Assembly: GCA_964252035.1 (NCBI GenBank)
Contig: OZ176200.1
From: Podarcis erhardii
Taxonomy: Eukaryota
Strand: one strand, 5' to 3'
Length of the DNA stretch: 64,000 bases
Positions 5,001 to 49,100 of the stretch are shown piece by piece. Positions within the stretch are counted from its first letter, which is position 1. Every line of letters begins with the position of its first letter. A program made the position numbers and the translations under genes. A model generated the notes under the pieces. That model did no database searches and was not told the origin of the DNA. It saw only the letters and a list, made by a program, of their open reading frames with translations.

Positions 5001-5880
5001 ACTGTAACAGTGATCAAAGAACCTCAACATGCAACATGCACTTGCCTTATAATCTTGGAAAGTTCCAATACTGCAGAAATAACTCTCTCTCTAGATGGAG
5101 TATATTCTCAGACAGCTGATTTCAAAAGCGAATTGCAAGCTGCTGTTCACTCCATTATTTATGACGAGAAACATGTTCTGACAGCAGAGGAACCCAGTGC
5201 CATAGCAGAACCTAAACACCACAAGTTGCTTACTTCTTGTTCACCTTCCAAACTAATGCAGTCTGCTACTGTAACTGAGACACCTGTTCAGCAACAATCT
5301 GTCAGTAATATTATTGGTTCACCTGAGCTACATCATGCTTACCTGAGTACTGAATCAGAAATACAGGAGGAGCAACTTGTGTCTATTCAAGAAGTCCAAA
5401 CTATTGCTCTCAGTGAGCACATTAAAGATGTAGGTACAACCACACTCACCCTTGATATTCCTGTAGCAGCAGCCCCAGTTGAGAGGTTAATAGATGCTCT
5501 AAAAGTGAAAGAGAGAAAGGAAGAACTTTTTGAGGAAAATGAAGAGGAGGCGCATGTAGTTAAGGCTAGCAAACAAGAAGACAGTCTAGGGAGCAGGGGT
5601 TGTCCCATCATGCGCCAAAGTTTTATAGACACTGTTGTTGAAGAAGGTGACAGCGTAAGTCTTACCTCCATTATAGAAAATGTTAAAGTGGTGAATTGGT
5701 ATTTTGGGGATAAGCTGGTATCTTCAGGAAATGAGTTCAAGTGCTTGCAAGACCATGACACATACACACTAGTAATCAACCAAGCATTCAAGGAAGTGCA
5801 TCAAGGAGAGTACACCTGTGAGGCTCTGAATGAAGGTGGAAAAACAACAGCAACAGCGAAACTCACAGTTGTAAAAAGAG
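2017..5880 (+). CDS. TTN: Titin N2B exon (Ig I24, I25, N2B unique sequence, I26; eq. human exon 49)
   Basis: Acceptor ttttttccccatacag|2017, donor AAGAG|gttgga at 5881; 3864 nt, phase 1-1. Two N-terminal Ig domains ([13 protein letters not shown]..., [13 protein letters not shown]...), a long acidic unique region, then Ig ...[11 protein letters not shown]. Confidence 0.95.
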
Positions 5881-8800
5881 GTTGGAATATGGGGATAAAA
5901 TATTGCTTTCCTATTTTCACTCATTTGCTAACTGAATAGAACACACATATATATATTTGTATCTCTAGTAGCATTTTGGATACAGATATAAGAAGTATAT
6001 AAACTTCAGCTGTGCACCACCAAACTAATCACAGATCCTCCACTTTTTGTTTCCTCTTTAGAACTTTTATTTCTTTAAATATATTTCTTATTCACACCTT
6101 TTATTTGCATTTTGCACTTTTTGGTACTGAAACAAAATTAAATTTTGTTTCATGAATGATGATTGTTAAATAAACTATTTGTAATGTCAGATTTTTAAAA
6201 AAAGAGTGCATGTCTTAGGAGCACTTTCATCCCCATATCCACAGAGCAACTTGGTTCACTTTTCCTTTTCATTGCTACAATAAAGATGCAATCCTGAACA
6301 CGCTGACTAGGGAGGAAGTCCCACTGAGCACTGAGCAGATGTGTATCTGAAGAAGTGTGCATGCACACGAAAGCTCATACCTAGAACTAACTCAGTTGGT
6401 CTTTAAGGTGCTACTGGAAGGAATTTTTTTATTTTGTTTTGACCACTGAGCACAGTGAGACTTGCTTCTGAGTAGACGTGCCAAGAGATTGCACAGCACG
6501 TTGTAGAAGTCATTGCACCATTTTAGCATAATGTCACACATTTCATGTTGAAAATGTTCTGGTACAACCTGGTATAATTTCATATATCATGTTGTTTGCA
6601 TGCCTTTAGTAGTAAGTAGCACATCAGAGTATCTTCAGAGTTCCATTATGCACTGCAATGTATGTAGCCCTCTGGTAGACTGAGCACTGCTTTCGGTTTG
6701 CTTTCACCTCTGACAACCATTTTTCTTTACAGCCACTTTCCTTGGATAGCTCATGAAACCACACATCTCATTTCTGTTGGTCACTTTATTAACAGTGTTT
6801 TGGAATGTACACTTATAAGCACCATACATGCTATTAGTATTACAATATCCACATGAACGTGGATGGTTGTAACCACATTATTCTTTGACTTTAAACTTCA
6901 GTTGGACCCATACTGAGGAGAAGGCTGGAATCCCAAGAAGTCGCTGTGAACCACCTTGCCAAGTTCACCTGCGAGATCGAGATGGCGCCAGACGTACGGT
7001 TTCAATGGTACAGAGCCGGTCGGGAAATCTATGATGGCGACAAGTATACCATACACACCGCTAATTATACATCCACTCTTCAAATCCCGAGACCGCAAGT
7101 AGTTGACTGTGGCGAATACAGCTGCAAAGCTTCCAATAAGTATGGCAGCGTAAGCAGCAAAGCAACCTTAACGGTAACTGGTAAGTGTGAGACATGAACC
7201 CTGTGCTGCTTCCTTGTTAGGTAACTGAATGTGTTCACCATTAGTATGTGGTAAAATGCATCTAGGGCCAATAAGAGACTAAGGATTTCCATTTCTGTGC
7301 ATATAGAAATAGAAGAAAATACCAGGTATTTGGCCCCCAGGTTCAACGTACATATCCAGGAGCAAAAAATATATTTTCATCGGAAGCTGAGTCAAAGAAC
7401 AGATTTGTAATTATTGTATATTGTTTCCGAACTCTTTTAAGCGTGGAGGAAAACTTACAAATAATAAAGGGAATACTCTAGTTCTTTTCAGATGTGCACC
7501 ATTTGGTACAAGCATACACACTACAAGCACCTCTCTCTAGTGATGGAAGAACTGCAGTTGGTGAAGGAGATTGTAGGCAAGAACTTCCACACTTAAAGCA
7601 TTTCACACTGGGGTCGGGAGGAGAGAAGAATGCAGCAATGGCATGGATTGTGCCCAGAGGCATTTGAAATGTTTTTTGATTCTGTCATATTCACCTATAA
7701 ACATTTGCTCTTAAATGTCTTAAGCTTCTCAAAAAGATTATAGTATTAACTGAGTCGTCTGATCATGATCTTGCTGATTTTATTTTATTTACTCTTTGAG
7801 ATTTATTTTATTTTGATTTTATTTACTCTTTGAGATCCATGCTTACAGACGTAGTGGGAGCCATCTTGAAATGAATAAAGGATACATAATGACATCGCTC
7901 TTTTAAAAAGATCTCCCTAGGCCTTTTTATTACTATAATAATTGCCTATACCTTTCATCTTACTGGAATCTGTATTACTGGTTAATTCATGACATGCACT
8001 TCAAATCCTCACATGTAAACCTAATTTCATGACTAAATAACTCTTGCTAGATGGCTTTTAAAACTGCTCTTTTAGATAACAAATAACTCTTGCTAGATGG
8101 CTTTTAGAACTGCTAGATCATCCTAATGATTTACTGGATGTATTGAGTCTTGGGAATCTTTACTGCACATTATTTCTAGGCAATTTAATGCGTGTATATG
8201 GAGACAGCGTTTCTGTCTCCTTTCTTTGGTGCTGGGGTGTGGGGGAAAGGTTGCTGTATTGGCCAAGTCCATGTCAACTTTCCCCCCTTTCTTTTGCAGA
8301 AGCGTTTCCTCCAACCTTTCTAACCAGACCCGAATCTATTACTACTTTTGTGGGTAAGAGTGCCAGGTTCCTCTGCACAGTGGCAGGCACCCCCGTAATC
8401 GACACAGTGTGGCAGAAAGATGGTGCCGCAATTTCTTCCACAGAACATTGCAAGATTTCAGCTTCTGAGAATAAGCACAGTTTAGAGATTCCACGCCTCA
8501 CCGTAAATGACAGGGGGGTATATACCTGCAAAGCCTCAAACAAATTTGGGGCAGACATCTGCCAGGCAGAAATAGCTGTCATTGATAAACCACGATTCGT
8601 CAAGGAACTGCAGTCTGTTCAGTCTGCAGTCAATAAGAAGATCCATCTTGAATGCCAAGTGGATGAAGACAGGAAAGTCACAGTATCCTGGAGCAAGGAT
8701 GGAACCCGAATACCTCCAGGCAAAGATTACAAGATTTGCTTTGAAGACAAGATAGCATCACTTGATATCCCTCTGTCTAAACTTAAAGATTCGGGAACAT

Positions 8801-40600: not shown

Positions 40601-43600
40601 TATCAGTCTATTCAGTATCTCCCTGTTACAGTAAATGGGAGCAGCTTCACCTATAAATTAGCAGGTCAAAACTGCTTATTTTTCCTGGGCACGTGACTGC
40701 ATATCACACTACGACTTGCATATTCACATGCATTATTTCATAGTATTGTCATCCAAAATGCATTTGCTTCAATACCCTGAGCTAGTTGTTCCTTGGTATC
40801 CTGTATTTTATACATGACTTGTGCGGGGGTATAAAATTAAATCAAACAAAAGGACCCCAATACATAAGCTGGGTAGTATTTTGTGCATTTAGTCAATGGT
40901 CTCATCTATGCCATGGGTTGTTGTTGTTGTTTGGTTTTAGTATAGTCCCTTTCTGCTCCACCACTTAATTCCCTCAATATTCTTTTTTCAGAAAAAGCAG
41001 CAGCTGCACCAGCAGCAGCTAAGAAAGCACCAACTGATGGCAAGCTTTACTTTGTCTCGGAGCCTCAAAGCATCACTGTCATCGAAAGTAAGCCAAGCTT
41101 TAAAAAAAATAGCCATCTTTCATAATACTTGAATTTGGCATATGTTGACTGCTGTTTCCCCCTGGCCAGGGACAGATATTTTCTTTACCACATTTCATTT
41201 CTTTTCTTCTTCATCAGAGAGCGTTGCAACATTTATTGCCAAAGTAGGTGGCGATCCCATCCCCAATGTTAAGTGGATGAAGGGAAAATGGAGGCAACTC
41301 AACCAAGGAGGTCGCATTAGCATCCAGCAAAGAGGAGATGAAGCCAAGCTGGAAATAAAGGATACAACAAAAACTGATTCTGGGCATTACAGATGTGTGG
41401 CTTTCAACCAACACGGTGAAATTGACAGCAACGTCAACCTACAGGTTGAGGAGAAGAAACAAGAAGTGATAGAAGGTGATCTTAGAGCAAAACTAAAGAA
41501 GTAAGTACCAGAATTGCTCTAAGTTTTAATCTGAAGGTGAGGCAGGATCTGAACCACAAATATAACTCAGGCTGCAACCCTAAACACTCTTAATAGCAGT
41601 CGTGTTCCACTGGACTTAGCAGGACTTATTTCTGACTAAACATGCCTCTTGAAGTCTATCAGACTATACCTGATCATGACACTCAAACTTCAGTCTGGTA
41701 AACATGTAGTAGATGTTATGCAGCCTTTTCAGCACTAGGGACTAACAGAATGTTGTATTAATTAAAGTCTGAAGCCACAATTTGATCCACTCTCTAATGC
41801 TGAGGACAACAGCCATGAGTTTTAGAAAATCAAACATTATGGTTTAGGTTGTGCTTAATCATGACTAACAAGTCCCACTGATTTCAGAGAGTCTACTCTA
41901 AGCATGATTCAATCCATATCCAATTGTATATGAATGAGATATCCCACAACGTGACAGCAGACCTACAGGGATATATCAGACATGCTGTTTTAAGGGCATG
42001 AATGAAAAGTTCTTTTTCCTGGTCAGAAAAATCATTAAGAGAAACTTGTCAAGAAGTAATTTATGATTCTCCGTGGCATGTTACATAAAGGAATGTAAAT
42101 TATCTGAAAAGTTAACTAAGTAAGTGCAAACCTATGCATTGTGCACACAGAGGTAAGCTTGGCTGAGTTTAAAAAGGATTCTAGATTCAGGTAGGTAGCC
42201 GTGTTGGTCTGACGCAGTCAAAATAAATTAAAAAATTAAAACATTGTCCAGTAGCACCTTAGAGACCAACTAAGTTTGTTCTGGGTATAAGCTTTCTTGT
42301 GCATGCACACTTCTTGAGATACACTGAAACAGAAGTCACCAGACCCTAATATATAGTGGGAGGGTGCAGTGGGGATTTTCTCAGAAGGGTAGTAGGAGAT
42401 GGGTGATTGACTCAATGGGTATGGTAAACCTGTTAACGACTGCAATTAGTCTTACAGGAAAAAGCAAGAGATAGTCTGCAGATGACCAAAAATAGCTTTA
42501 GCAATTTAGCAATTCAGAACATTGAAACATTCAACACAGAGAGCATATTTTATGAACAACACCAAAAATTCTGCCATTTCTATAGGACCCCAACTAAAAG
42601 GAAGGAAGATGAGGAAGAAAAGGCCATTGATATAATGGAACTTCTGAAAAATGTAGATCCTAAAGAATATGAAAAATATGCACGTATGTATGGAATTACC
42701 GATTTCCGAGGTCTCCTCCAAGCCTTTGAATTGCTGAAACAAAGCCAGGAAGAAGAAACTCATAGACTGGTAAATACCAGCATATACATTTGCTTCAGAG
42801 TAATTTTTTGAAATGTGTTGTGCTATTATTGCTTAAATAAGTGTGTTCAATATTCCAGATATGCAGTTAACCAATTACAGAGATTTATATTCTATTTTGG
42901 AACTTAGCTGTTGCTTCTGATGTCATGAAGGTTCACATTTGGGGATCGTTTATTCATGGCATCTTCACAGCAAACCCTACTCAGTGTTGTTCTCCAAAAG
43001 ATGTCAATCATACCTCATCACATGAGGTGTATAGACTAAGAGGCATTGTTTAGGGACAGTAGAGAAGAAAAGATGTGCTTCTGATAGTTTTTACTGGGTT
43101 CTCTTTGGGTAACCTTAAGCATTTTGGAAGGATTGGAGTTGAGCTGTCCTGCATGTAAAGGAAGTTAGATCTGCAATGAATATACAGAACTGCTTCATTT
43201 TCGTAAAGTTTTGGCAAAAGGGAATAGCTAAAAGCATGAAGGTTTTCTACCATTTTAAACCATGGTTTTTGTTCCAACAGGAGATTGAAGTAACACAGAG
43301 ATCTAGAAGGGAAGAACAAGAGTTTGATGAACTGGTATCATTTATTCAGCAAAGACTTACACAGACAGAGGTAGTTATTGCCATATATTACACAATTTAA
43401 TTATGTGTGCTGACAACTGTAGCTAATACATAGCATAGGCTGTGCTCTGAAACAGTCAAACATATGAAAAATGTTTTCCAGCCCATCACTCTGATCAGAG
43501 ATATTGAAGATCTGACTGTAGTAACAGATGAAGATGCCGTGTTTGAGTGTGAGATTAAAATTAACTATCCAGAAATCAAACTTTCCTGGTACAAAGGCAC

Positions 43601-46105: not shown

Positions 46106-49100
46106 TGTCACTTAAGCTGCATAAGGATCCACACTTCAAGAATGAGTTTCTTATTCGTATACGGGATGCAGCCAGATTAATCTGATGGTCCCTTTCCTTG
46201 CACATTTGGTTCTCCAGATATCCCAGATGCTAGAGTTGCAGTTCCTGTTGAAGTTCCAGCTGAAGGTAAGCCTTATATACAAAAGATTCCGCTGTTAAGG
46301 GTGGGAGAGCAGGTGGTTTAGAATTTGTGTGCCATATGAATGTTCATTGATTGAATTTTCCCTTGCGTTTATCAGAAACTCCTGCTCTTCCTCTCTTCCT
46401 TCTTATGCCAGAAGAGAAGAAAAAGGAAAAAGGTATTACAGTTCTGTTGCATACATGCTCAGAAATGCAGATCTTTACATGCACTTTCACTTGCTGCTGG
46501 GTTCATTTTGGGTGGCTAATGGCTTTATCTATTTTGTACTTGTTTTAGTCGTTAAAAAGACAACCGTGCAGAAAGTCACCAAAAAGGTGGTTCCAAAAGC
46601 TCCAGAAGAAGTTGCCCCTCCTAAAGGTACTATCATACTAGAAGTGTTGATTCAAATACTATAAAATTGATTTATAAGGAACATATGTTAACCAGTGTAG
46701 ATTAAGGCATAATCACAGCAAATGAAGGGGGGGGGACCATCTTCCTCTCATTCTAAAATCTTTAGGAGTTTTCACATGTTACTACAAATGCATAAGTTCA
46801 GGAACATCTTCTATATCTGCAAACATGTGTAGGCTCTCTTCATGCAATAGGGTCCAGTACTATTTGGTTATTAAGACACAGCTCCAGCTTATGTCACAGA
46901 GCAGCCATATGCATGTCTATTCAGCCAATGGGACTTATAGTCTACAATCTGCCCTCACTTATCTGGGAGTAAGAATTCAATAGGGCTTACACTGGAGTGA
47001 ACCTGGTTAGGACTGCGTTGTAAGGGCAGGATTCCACTCATGAGTCCTGTCAGTGGAAGACCTGCATGGGGACTTCCACTTGCACAATGGGGCTTCCCCT
47101 CTCCCTGTGTGCCCCCCTTCCCCATGAAACTGGTTCGGGGGGAGGGGGAATCAAGACAACCCTCAGAACAGCACACAGTGGGAAGAGAGGGGGGTCGTTC
47201 TGTCTGGCAAGTCAAAATGTTTCCACTGGTGGAACAGTTGTCCTAGCATGACATTGAATTCCTCCCTAGCTGTGGATGGCTTTAAAAGAGTATTAGGCAA
47301 ATTAATGGAGGGGAAGACTGCCAGTGGCTACTAGCCATGTGGAGAGCCAGCGTGGTGTAGTGGTTAAGAGTCTCGTAATCTGGGGAACTGGGTTCGCGTC
47401 TCCGCTCCTCCACATGCAGCTGCTGGGTAACCTTGGGCCAGTCACACTTCTCTGAAGTCTCTCAGCCCCACTCACCTCACAGAGTGTTTGTTGTGGGGGA
47501 GGAAGGGAAAGGAGAATATTAGCCACTTTGAGACTCCTTAAAGGGAGTGAAAGGTGGGATATCAAATCCAAACTCCTCCTCTTCTTCTTCTTCTTCTTCT
47601 TCTTCTTCTTCTTCTCTACTCCACTTCTACCACAGTTGGAGGAAGCAATGCTTCCGAAAACTAGTTGCTGGGAGCTACAAGAGAGTAGAATTGCTCTTGT
47701 GCTAATGTTCTGCTCCCTGGTTTCCCACAGGCATCTGGTTGGCCACTGTGAGAACAGGATTTTGGATTAGATGGGCCATTGGCCTGATTCAGGAGGCTAT
47801 TATTAGGTCTTGTGTGTGTGTGATTGCAGCCTCAGTTGGGTTGTCGCTGCTGAATTTGACAGAAGACTCAATTAGCAATATTTGTTCCCGAGATTTGTTT
47901 CTCTCCCATTTGTCTTTAAATGTTAACGAGAATGCCGTGCATCTTAACAATACAAACCGGAGATCTCAGTCCAGTTTCATCTGACTAATGTTAATGAGAC
48001 CAGATGAAATTAAATCCAAAGGTTAGCTCATGATGCTCAATCAAGCCGCTTAGCAGACATATCTGTAAATGTTTCAGAAGTGGCAAAGGAACCAGAACCC
48101 CCATCTTCAGCCCTAGTCCCAGTTCCAAAAGTACAGGAAATTATTCCAACAGAAGGTAAAGAATCAAATACTGAAATGCGCATACTAAGAAAATAATATT
48201 TTATGGGGAGAATGCCACCCACTCCCCATCTTTTATTGCTTGGGCCATTTAAAATGTGGCGCTGTCATTCTTCATTTTCCCTTCAGTCATCCTAACATCA
48301 TTATTCATGCAAAGGTCATCCCTTTACAGGATTTTCCAGATAATACTAATTTGAACTCTTTCTTCAACTACAGATAGGTAGCCGTGTTGGTCTGCCATGG
48401 TCAAAACAAAATAAAAAAATTCCTTCCAGTAGCACCTTAAAGACCAACTGAGTTAGTTCTAGGTATGAGCTTTCGTGTGCATGCACACTTCTTCAGACGT
48501 TTACTTCAGGAGCTTGCTGCAGATAAGCCGGAGGATTTAACTATCAGTTGACTAGAATACCCACTGAAATACTGATAGTTTATTAAAAGGACTTTGAAAA
48601 GACAGTAGGTAGAATTAAAGCAGGATAGCTTTTGATATAGTGGAGGTGTGTACTAGCACAAGAGATTAGGAGGCAGTTTTTTCATTAGTTTTTTCTCCTT
48701 GCAGCCCCCTTTGCCACCTGCCACACTGTTCCAGAGTGAAACCTCTTGAACTGATTTTCTGGGGACACAAGGGGCTGCAGCAGAAAATGGAGGAGAGGGT
48801 TCAGCAAAAAAAAATCTCCTCTCCTTCTCTTATATCAGTGGACACTTCCATGCAGAATTGTATTTCATAGGGTTGGAGGAGACATTCAATTTTGTTTCCG
48901 TTTTAATGACAAACTAACTAGTTCACACTTTTTGATCCAATAGCCAAACTGAAATGCAGCTCTCCTTTGAAATTCACACTCCTTCAAATTTTGTGATGTA
49001 GTTCTCCAAGCATAAATTTGTATACTAGGGGCAAGTGTGCATGAAAATGCATCAAATAGTCGAAACACTTCATTATATTAGGGGAAAATACTTGCAAAAA

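What the first reader, a model, noticed from the sequence alone, without database searches (positions are those of the whole stretch)
6343..6380. Intact sense-strand hammerhead ribozyme motif in the intron between the N2B exon and I27
Seen on the TTN pre-mRNA strand: GUAU-CUGAAGA-A-GUGUG(CAUG)CACAC-GAAA-GC-UC^-AUAC. All catalytic core nucleotides are present, helix I (GUAU/AUAC) and helix II are perfectly paired, and helix III is reduced to self-complementary AGCU. The ~105-bp insert starts essentially at the ribozyme. The two other family copies in the window are antisense and damaged (core G5>C at ~42316; helix I lost at 48497). Established: Penelope-like retroelements carry minimal type-I hammerheads with a tiny palindromic helix III that cleave best as dimers, and an extra A after A9 is tolerated in a natural viroid hammerhead. 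Inference: a self-cleaving site 500 nt downstream of the weak N2B donor could cut only N2B-adjacent nascent RNA and so affect N2B inclusion, splicing kinetics or termination. It may equally be a neutral, monomer-inactive insertion.
Basis: partly seen in the sequence, partly recalled or inferred. Interest (0 to 1): 0.78.

Follow-up and report, generated by a model that had tools for sequence, protein, structure and literature searches.

The report
Young Penelope repeat with hammerhead motif
The hammerhead ribozyme motif is really there, on the titin sense strand. It is the standard minimal ribozyme of a very abundant lizard jumping gene, in a recent 111-base insertion that two related lizards lack, so it is most likely an inert passenger.

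Summary
Window 6343-6380 (+) reads exactly as described. It is the only hit of a relaxed minimal-hammerhead descriptor in the 64 kb (0.01 expected by chance). It lies on the TTN sense strand, in the 1,021-nt intron after the N2B exon.

The motif has the published hallmarks of Penelope-like-element (PLE) minimal type-I hammerheads: an extra nucleotide after A9, a G10.1-C11.1 pair, a palindromic AGCU in place of helix III and a 4-bp helix I. It sits in a 111-nt, 5'-truncated, tail-less PLE fragment flanked by an 11-bp target-site duplication.

Reads from two related lizards show the exact empty site, so the insertion is lineage-specific. It is 100% identical over 100 nt to an inverted copy 42 kb away, so its intactness reflects youth and not selection. 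The family is extremely high-copy.

No Rfam hammerhead model matches. In native context the predicted helix I probability is about 1% or less. Published work finds such monomers inactive in vitro, and the one lizard PLE hammerhead tested did not cleave without the element's own protein.

This scan already reached the same verdict for sense-strand intronic copies elsewhere in this genome.

The parts
6343..6380 (+). Minimal type-I hammerhead motif. Helix I 6343-6346/6377-6380. Core CUGAAGA 6347-6353. Extra A 6354. Helix II 6355-6359/6364-6368 with CAUG loop 6360-6363. GAA (G12-A14) 6369-6371. Palindromic A15.1-G-C-U16.1 6372-6375. C17 at 6376. Predicted scissile bond 6376/6377.
   Evidence: Read directly. 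Only descriptor hit in the window, 0.01 expected. Hallmarks as in PMC4209133.
6341..6442 (+). Family-homologous part of the insertion: a 5'-truncated, tail-less 3'-terminal fragment of a Penelope-like element. 6443-6445 (CCA) also match the element and overlap the duplication.
   Evidence: 100/100 identity of 6346-6445 to the 48k copy and 87% of 6341-6435 to the 42k copy. Family reads continue past both ends into shared family sequence (table 7).
6332..6340 (+). 9-nt junction filler TGAGCAGAT that does not match the family. It repeats 6 nt of the target duplication and is predicted to pair with core CUG and with the GCUC^A cleavage site.
   Evidence: Alignment. Folds.
6321..6331 (+). Left copy of the 11-bp target-site duplication CCACTGAGCAC.
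   Evidence: Empty-site joint 6320->6443 with 11 letters fitting both sides, in DNA contigs of organism B and contigs of organism A (table 5).
6443..6453 (+). Right copy of the 11-bp target-site duplication.
5881..6901 (+). TTN intron between the N2B exon (ends 5880, donor AGAG|GTTGGA) and the next Ig exon (6902-7181).
   Evidence: RNA contig joint 5878->6900, GT..AG (cut +2), depth 59.6. I-set domains on both sides. Titin is the best PDB match.
48371..48497 (-). Second young copy, antisense to TTN. The hammerhead 30-mer is exact, the helix I 5' strand is lost to 5' truncation, and it carries the optional ~30-nt PLE tail (...CATGGCAGACCAACACGGCTACCTATCTG).
   Evidence: Tail concept from PMC11167929.
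42188..42352 (-). Older copy (83-87% identical), antisense to TTN, with G5>C, C11.1>A and C17>U. It extends further 5' into the element and carries the tail. The 5' limit is approximate.
   Evidence: Upstream family sequence matches loose-end reads (table 7).

Best explanation
This is a recent, lineage-specific retrotransposon insertion. A Penelope-like element (PLE) RNA was reverse-transcribed from the proximal of its two internal start sites, so the copy has no tail. The copy was 5'-truncated two bases upstream of the element's own minimal hammerhead, and integration produced an 11-bp target-site duplication in the TTN intron after the N2B exon. The hammerhead is part of the element's own transcript; its role in transposition is not settled in the literature. 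In TTN it is a passenger: intact because it is young, lacking a helix III as a monomer, without a sense-strand partner nearby, and predicted to be folded away. Shown here: the motif, the family, the anatomy, absence from relatives, identity to a second copy, and high copy number. Inferred: catalytic inactivity in TTN pre-mRNA and neutrality.
For: [quoted passage not shown] Layout: in the lizard PLE PAc the hammerhead sits at the pLTR-ORF junction, reverse transcription starts at two adjacent internal sites, and the optional 30-40 bp tail lies between them (PMC11167929). Here the 6343 copy ends 66 nt after the cut site without a tail, and the 48k and 42k copies run about 30 nt further. Exact empty site: joint 6320->6443 skipping 122 with 11 ambiguous letters, in organism B DNA (unique depth 13.6, about 0.9% divergent) and in organism A (about 2.7% divergent in the exon). 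100/100 identity to the 48k copy. Summed word depth on the repeat is about 1.7 million against 13.6 on unique flanks. Folding: helix I pair probability is 0.7 in the isolated 38-mer but 0.013 or less in every longer context, and the copy-specific filler pairs with CUG and with the cleavage site. Fold energies are not better than shuffles (z -0.44 and +1.02). No pile-up of read starts or ends in about 250-300x of family RNA reads (table 6). Literature: single min-HHRs showed no detectable cleavage and dimers only weak cleavage; the PAc hammerhead did not cleave without PLE protein, and no RNA-seq reads began or ended at its site; 8 of 9 Xenopus dimer elements did not cleave.
Against: All catalytic-core positions are intact, so residual activity cannot be excluded from sequence. 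PLE hammerheads can cleave as dimers or with the element's protein, and family transcripts are present in cells, so trans partners exist in principle. No RNA from heart or muscle of the species that carries the insertion could be examined. The raw RNA runs laid had no TTN reads. Standard libraries capture 5'-OH and cyclic-phosphate ends poorly. Thermodynamic folds ignore co-transcriptional folding and proteins.
Confidence: 0.9

Rival explanations
1. The copy self-cleaves nascent TTN pre-mRNA at a low level. This could happen as a trans-dimer through the AGCU palindrome or the 14-nt helix II palindrome, with another TTN transcript or an abundant family transcript, or with help from PLE protein. 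The cut would perturb splicing or termination downstream of the N2B exon.
For: The catalytic core and family hallmarks are intact. Dimers of such motifs cleave weakly in vitro, and a lizard PLE hammerhead is protein-assisted. Family RNA is expressed. The homodimer MFE is much lower than twice the monomer MFE (-35.0 against -18.0 kcal/mol).
Against: The insertion is absent from two relatives, and the one with RNA data (organism A) splices N2B to the next exon normally, so it is not a conserved part of TTN regulation. There is no other sense-strand copy in 64 kb. The predicted dimer pairs the helix II palindromes and does not form helix III. Helix I probability is about 1% or less in context. 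No end pile-up is seen family-wide. A strongly cleaving site in titin would probably be deleterious.
Confidence: 0.05
2. The insertion matters to TTN through RNA duplex formation and not through catalysis. The 100-nt sense copy (6346-6445) and its perfect antisense twin (48398-48497) would pair in the pre-mRNA and favour A-to-I editing, exon-block looping or back-splicing across the I-band exons between them.
For: 100/100 identity in inverted orientation within one transcription unit. Inverted intronic repeats are an established driver of back-splicing and editing (general knowledge, not tested here).
Against: The distance is 42 kb, with many competing local structures and other repeats. No RNA of the carrier species was available. 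Whether the 48k copy is also lineage-specific is unknown.
Confidence: 0.04
3. The motif is a chance resemblance and not a hammerhead relative.
For: No Rfam hammerhead model matches even at E<=10. Fold energy is no better than shuffles.
Against: The descriptor gives 1 hit against 0.01 expected. The motif is shared by repeat copies. It meets four hallmarks that are not part of the core descriptor. It sits in an element with the PLE tail layout. It is the least variable stretch among family reads: 0 variable sites in 38 nt against 7 in the next 62 nt (table 3).
Confidence: 0.01

Closest known systems
Minimal hammerheads (min-HHR) of metazoan Penelope-like elements (Cervera & de la Pena 2014, PMC4209133; Lunse, Weinberg & Breaker, RNA Biol, cited in PMC6765202)
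   Same: Type-I topology. CUGANGA/GAAA core. Unpaired nucleotide between A9 and G10.1. G10.1-C11.1 pair. No loop 3, with palindromic A-G-C-U. 4-bp helix I. Dispersed single copies from truncated elements. Reported in reptiles.
   Different: Helix II is 5 bp with a 4-nt palindromic loop (a 14-nt perfect palindrome), against the 6-8 bp described for Schistosoma and Drosophila. Activity of this lacertid family is untested.
PAc, the Poseidon PLE of Anolis carolinensis (PMC11167929)
   Same: A lizard PLE. The hammerhead is followed within about 65-100 nt by two alternative 3' ends that differ by a ~30-nt AC-rich tail. Copies are variably 5'-truncated.
   Different: Sequence similarity to PAc could not be checked: the element strings were not found in the held supplements. 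The target here is not obviously AT-rich. No RT-EN reading frame is present in this window.
Non-LTR retrozymes: tandem hammerhead units that give small circular RNAs (PMC7229834; bioRxiv 10.64898/2026.07.22.740005)
   Same: PLE-derived type-I hammerhead on a short non-coding unit.
   Different: This locus holds one motif and no tandem array, so there is no second cut site to release a unit.
Conserved host intronic self-cleaving ribozymes (the mammalian CPEB3 HDV-like ribozyme; the intronic hammerheads behind Rfam HH9/HH10)
   Same: Sense-strand ribozyme motif inside an intron of a protein-coding gene.
   Different: By my own knowledge those are conserved at orthologous positions and stable as monomers. 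This one is absent from close relatives, has no helix III and matches no Rfam model.

Membership tests
PLE minimal hammerhead (min-HHR) | Conserved core: C3 U4 G5 A6 N7 G8 A9 ... G12 A13 A14, A15.1, U16.1, H17 | tested here: met
   CUGAAGA / GAA / A..U / C at 6347-6376. Single descriptor hit in the window.
PLE minimal hammerhead (min-HHR) | [quoted passage not shown] | tested here: met
   A at 6354. Hallmark listed in PMC4209133.
PLE minimal hammerhead (min-HHR) | G10.1-C11.1 closing pair of helix II | tested here: met
   G6355-C6368. Helix II pair probability is 0.98 in isolation and 0.44-0.76 in context.
PLE minimal hammerhead (min-HHR) | No or tiny helix III, with palindromic 15.2-16.2 | tested here: met
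   AGCU at 6372-6375 with no loop.
PLE minimal hammerhead (min-HHR) | Short helix I (4-5 bp), type-I topology | tested here: met
   GUAU/AUAC, 4 bp; the next pair U6342/C6381 does not form.
PLE minimal hammerhead (min-HHR) | Larger than usual helix II (6-8 bp) | tested here: inconclusive
   5 bp plus a CAUG loop. The whole 14 nt is a perfect palindrome.
PLE minimal hammerhead (min-HHR) | Lies in the terminal repeat / 3' region of a PLE (an element with an RT plus GIY-YIG EN reading frame) | tested here: inconclusive
   The optional-tail 3' architecture and variable 5' truncation match PLEs. No full-length element or RT reading frame is in the window, and none could be fetched.
PLE minimal hammerhead (min-HHR) | Self-cleavage after H17, at least as a dimer | not testable with these tools
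   Needs in vitro transcription. Only indirect evidence: no read-end pile-up in family RNA (table 6).
Rfam hammerhead models (Hammerhead_1, _3, _II, HH9, HH10) | Score at or above the family's gathering threshold | tested here: not met
   No match at gathering score in the whole window. No hammerhead match at E<=10 on 6250-6480.
Non-LTR retrozyme | Two or more tandem sense hammerheads bracketing a unit | tested here: not met
   One sense motif only; the other two copies are antisense and 36-42 kb away.
Conserved host intronic ribozyme | Presence at the orthologous site in related species | tested here: not met
   Exact empty site in organism B DNA contigs and organism A contigs (table 5).

The most novel reading that the evidence does not exclude
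The intact sense-strand min-HHR is occasionally activated in cardiomyocytes, by pairing with abundant family transcripts or by PLE protein, and cuts nascent TTN RNA just downstream of the N2B exon. That would give this lizard lineage a new retroelement-borne modifier of titin isoform output.
Probability: 0.03. Interest if true: 0.6.

Novelty: already known. Interest (0 to 1): 0.1.

Why it matters
As it stands it matters little. Minimal hammerheads dispersed by Penelope-like elements are documented in reptile genomes, and sense-strand intronic copies are expected by the thousand. The useful result is negative. An 'intact ribozyme in a famous gene' is explained here by the youth of the insertion: exact empty site in relatives, and 100% identity to a sister copy. 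That should lower the priority of similar calls in this genome. If the motif did cleave, it would be a rare case of a retroelement ribozyme acting on a host pre-mRNA.

Tried and rejected
Rfam gave no hammerhead family, at gathering score on the whole window or at E<=10 on 231 bases. PLE min-HHRs fall outside those models, so this does not argue against the motif.

I tried to compute the energy of the classical double-hammerhead dimer with helix III in trans. It failed because the structure is not nested in a two-strand representation. The unconstrained dimer MFE pairs the helix II palindromes instead.

A search for the element's strings in the supplements of the PAc paper found nothing, so direct similarity to Anolis PAc is untested. 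Lunse et al. (PMC5785218) is not held and is cited only through PMC6765202.

I considered that the 9-nt filler might be an upstream exon of a spliced PLE RNA, because the family has an acceptor-like polypyrimidine-CAG at the helix I edge. No family read carries that filler (table 7), so I dropped the idea.

I considered that copies might begin at the ribozyme cut site. They begin around 6341-6343 and not at 6377, so the 5' ends are not cleavage products (table 7).

The raw RNA runs of organism A had no TTN reads (exon depth 0), so they could not test cleavage at this locus.

Operator rules: the window has no N.

Full report
**Observation.** I wrote a relaxed minimal-hammerhead descriptor: CUGANGA, 0-1 extra nucleotide, helix II of 4 bp or more, GAAA, 2-8 nt, U16.1, H17, helix I of 4 bp or more. 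It hits once in the window on both strands, at these coordinates. In 200 first-order Markov sequences of the same length it gave 0.01 hits on average. The 30-nt core occurs three times against 0 expected:
- 6347-6376 (+), exact.
- 48467-48496 (-), exact.
- 42289-42318 (-), with three mismatches: G5>C at 42316, C11.1>A and C17>U.

The 48k copy has lost the 5' strand of helix I by truncation.

**Gene context.** The flanking exons encode I-set Ig domains, and the downstream one matches titin best among solved structures. An RNA contig of a related species joins 5878->6900 across a GT..AG intron of 1,021 nt. TTN is thus on the + strand, the intron is 5881-6901, and the motif lies on the pre-mRNA strand about 463 nt past the donor AGAG|GTTGGA.

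**What it is.** Cervera and de la Pena (PMC4209133) defined the minimal hammerheads of metazoan Penelope-like elements (PLEs). Beyond the catalytic boxes, they list these recurrent features:
- a conserved G10.1-C11.1 pair;
- palindromic 15.2-16.2 with no or a tiny loop 3;
- a short helix I of 4-5 bp.

They also report that most copies are dispersed single motifs from truncated elements, and that reptiles have them. The TTN motif meets each of these features. Helix II is shorter than described (5 bp with a palindromic CAUG loop, the 14 nt forming one perfect palindrome). No Rfam hammerhead model matches, at gathering score or at E<=10 on 231 bases. That is expected for a motif without helix III. 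It means the motif is a member of the PLE min-HHR class by descriptor and context, and not by covariance model.

**Anatomy of the insertion.** Aligning the three copies, and reading the loose ends of family reads (table 7), shows that the family sequence continues on both sides of the TTN copy.
- Upstream of 6341 it continues as ...CTTCTGTTTCA|GTGTATCTG.
- Downstream of 6442 it continues as a ~30-nt AC-rich stretch, ...(C/T)ATGGCAGACCAACACGGCTACCTATCTG. The 48k and 42k copies carry this stretch and the TTN copy lacks it.

This is the PLE signature described for the Anolis element PAc. There, reverse transcription starts at two adjacent internal sites in an AC-rich stem-loop downstream of the hammerhead, and the optional 30-40 bp 'tail' is the sequence between them. 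Insertions are variably 5'-truncated (PMC11167929).

The TTN copy is therefore a 5'-truncated, tail-less fragment:
- the family-homologous part is 6341-6442;
- a 9-nt filler TGAGCAGAT at 6332-6340 precedes it;
- 11-bp duplications CCACTGAGCAC flank it, at 6321-6331 and 6443-6453.

'The insert starts essentially at the ribozyme' is correct. However, many family copies have heterogeneous flanks starting at 6341-6343 (table 7), so this is a family-wide preferred 5' end and not a peculiarity of TTN. It is also not the cleavage site, which would give copies starting at 6377.

**Age and conservation.** This is the decisive result. I laid DNA contigs of organism B (8 differences in 921 flanking bases) and contigs of organism A (13 differences in 479 exon bases) on the stretch. 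Both show a joint 6320->6443 that skips 122 bases, with 11 letters fitting either side (table 5). That is the exact empty site with one copy of the duplication, carried in organism B by the contig at unique depth (13.6). The insertion is therefore absent from two related lizards and arose, or is still segregating, in the window's own lineage.

In agreement, 6346-6445 is 100% identical over 100 nt to the 48k copy, while the 42k copy is 83-87% identical. The two young copies share two subfamily-specific bases (T6382, C6393) that differ from the majority of family reads in organism A (table 3). The intact core thus reflects youth, not purifying selection in TTN.

The family is very abundant. Summed word depth over the repeat reaches about 1.7 million against 13.6 on unique flanks in organism B. 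The tool warns this is not a copy number, but the order of magnitude is clear. Earlier notes of this scan report many such motifs in the same genome, including sense-strand copies in AKAP6, TBXAS1, TRHDE, VGLL4 and JMY introns, with the same verdict. Those are unchecked AI notes and I count them only as leads.

**How it most likely behaves.** As a monomer the motif has no helix III, because A15.1-G-C-U16.1 are contiguous. Published tests give these results:
- Single min-HHRs showed no detectable cleavage, and dimers or trimers cleaved weakly, mostly at non-physiological Mg2+.
- The lizard PAc hammerhead showed no cleavage without PLE protein. Its mutants did not affect insertion in vitro. No public RNA-seq reads started or ended at its site.
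- Eight of nine Xenopus dimer elements did not cleave.

At this locus there is no second sense-strand copy within 64 kb. Folding predictions give these results:
- Helix I has a pair probability of about 0.7 in the isolated 38-mer, but 0.013 or less in every longer context.
- The copy-specific filler pairs CAGAU with AUCUG, sequestering C3-U4-G5. In the minimum-energy fold of the insert it also pairs UGAGC with GCUCA, covering the cleavage site.
- Fold energies are no better than shuffles (z -0.44 and +1.02).
- The predicted homodimer pairs the helix II palindromes and does not build helix III.
- Among about 250-300x of family RNA reads in two raw runs, no position shows a pile-up of starts or ends (table 6).

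These runs had no TTN reads, and the libraries are not end-specific, so this is weak evidence at family level only. Taken together, I put 0.9 on a neutral, catalytically silent passenger. I put about 0.05 on weak cleavage with some effect on TTN processing, about 0.04 on an effect through duplex formation with the inverted twin, and about 0.01 on chance.

**One point in favour of the element's own use of the motif.** Among family reads and contigs, no site within 6343-6380 varies at 10% or more, whereas seven sites do in 6381-6442 (table 3). That fits constraint on the hammerhead in the active master elements. The 92% likeness filter and uneven depth make this only suggestive.

**Comparison and novelty.** The closest known thing is the PLE min-HHR class, and the layout is that of PAc-type PLE insertions. 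It is not a retrozyme locus, because the motif is single. It is not a conserved host intronic ribozyme, because relatives have the empty site. Nothing here lies outside what is already described, so novelty is 'already known' and interest is low.

**Limits.** I could not examine RNA from heart or muscle of the carrier species. I could not test whether the insertion is fixed or polymorphic there, or fetch a full-length element to tie the fragment to an RT-EN reading frame.

Noticed in passing
window 6346-6445 (+) and 48398-48497 (-): Two 100% identical 100-nt PLE fragments lie in inverted orientation 42 kb apart inside TTN. In the pre-mRNA they could form a perfect 100-bp duplex, a possible substrate for editing or back-splicing.
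   Followed up: no
window 42319-42352 (-) and family reads laid at 6341 (table 7): The family sequence just upstream of helix I ends in a polypyrimidine tract plus CAG (…CTTCTGTTTCAG), like a 3' splice site. This recalls the D. virilis PLE intron that ends at the 5' edge of helix I (PMC4209133). The TTN copy is truncated and lacks it.
   Followed up: partly
window 6332-6340 (+): A 9-nt filler TGAGCAGAT at the 5' junction repeats 6 nt of the target duplication. It is predicted to pair with both the core CUG and the GCUC^A cleavage site of this copy.
   Followed up: partly
window 6338-6348 joined to 6368-6408 (table 5): Family RNA reads and one organism B DNA contig show 'opposite strands' joints near the 5' edge of the hammerhead, and a 'goes back 63' joint (6405->6343). 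These indicate fold-back and short tandem arrangements of this family elsewhere in the genome.
   Followed up: no
window 6343-6442 (table 3): Among family reads no site in the 38-nt hammerhead varies at 10% or more, against seven sites in the next 62 nt. This is suggestive of constraint on the ribozyme in master elements.
   Followed up: partly
window 5878-6900: In a related species that lacks the insertion, an RNA contig at depth 59.6 splices the N2B exon directly to the next Ig exon through the non-consensus donor AGAG|GTTGGA. Intronic contigs lie at depth 2-4.
   Followed up: partly
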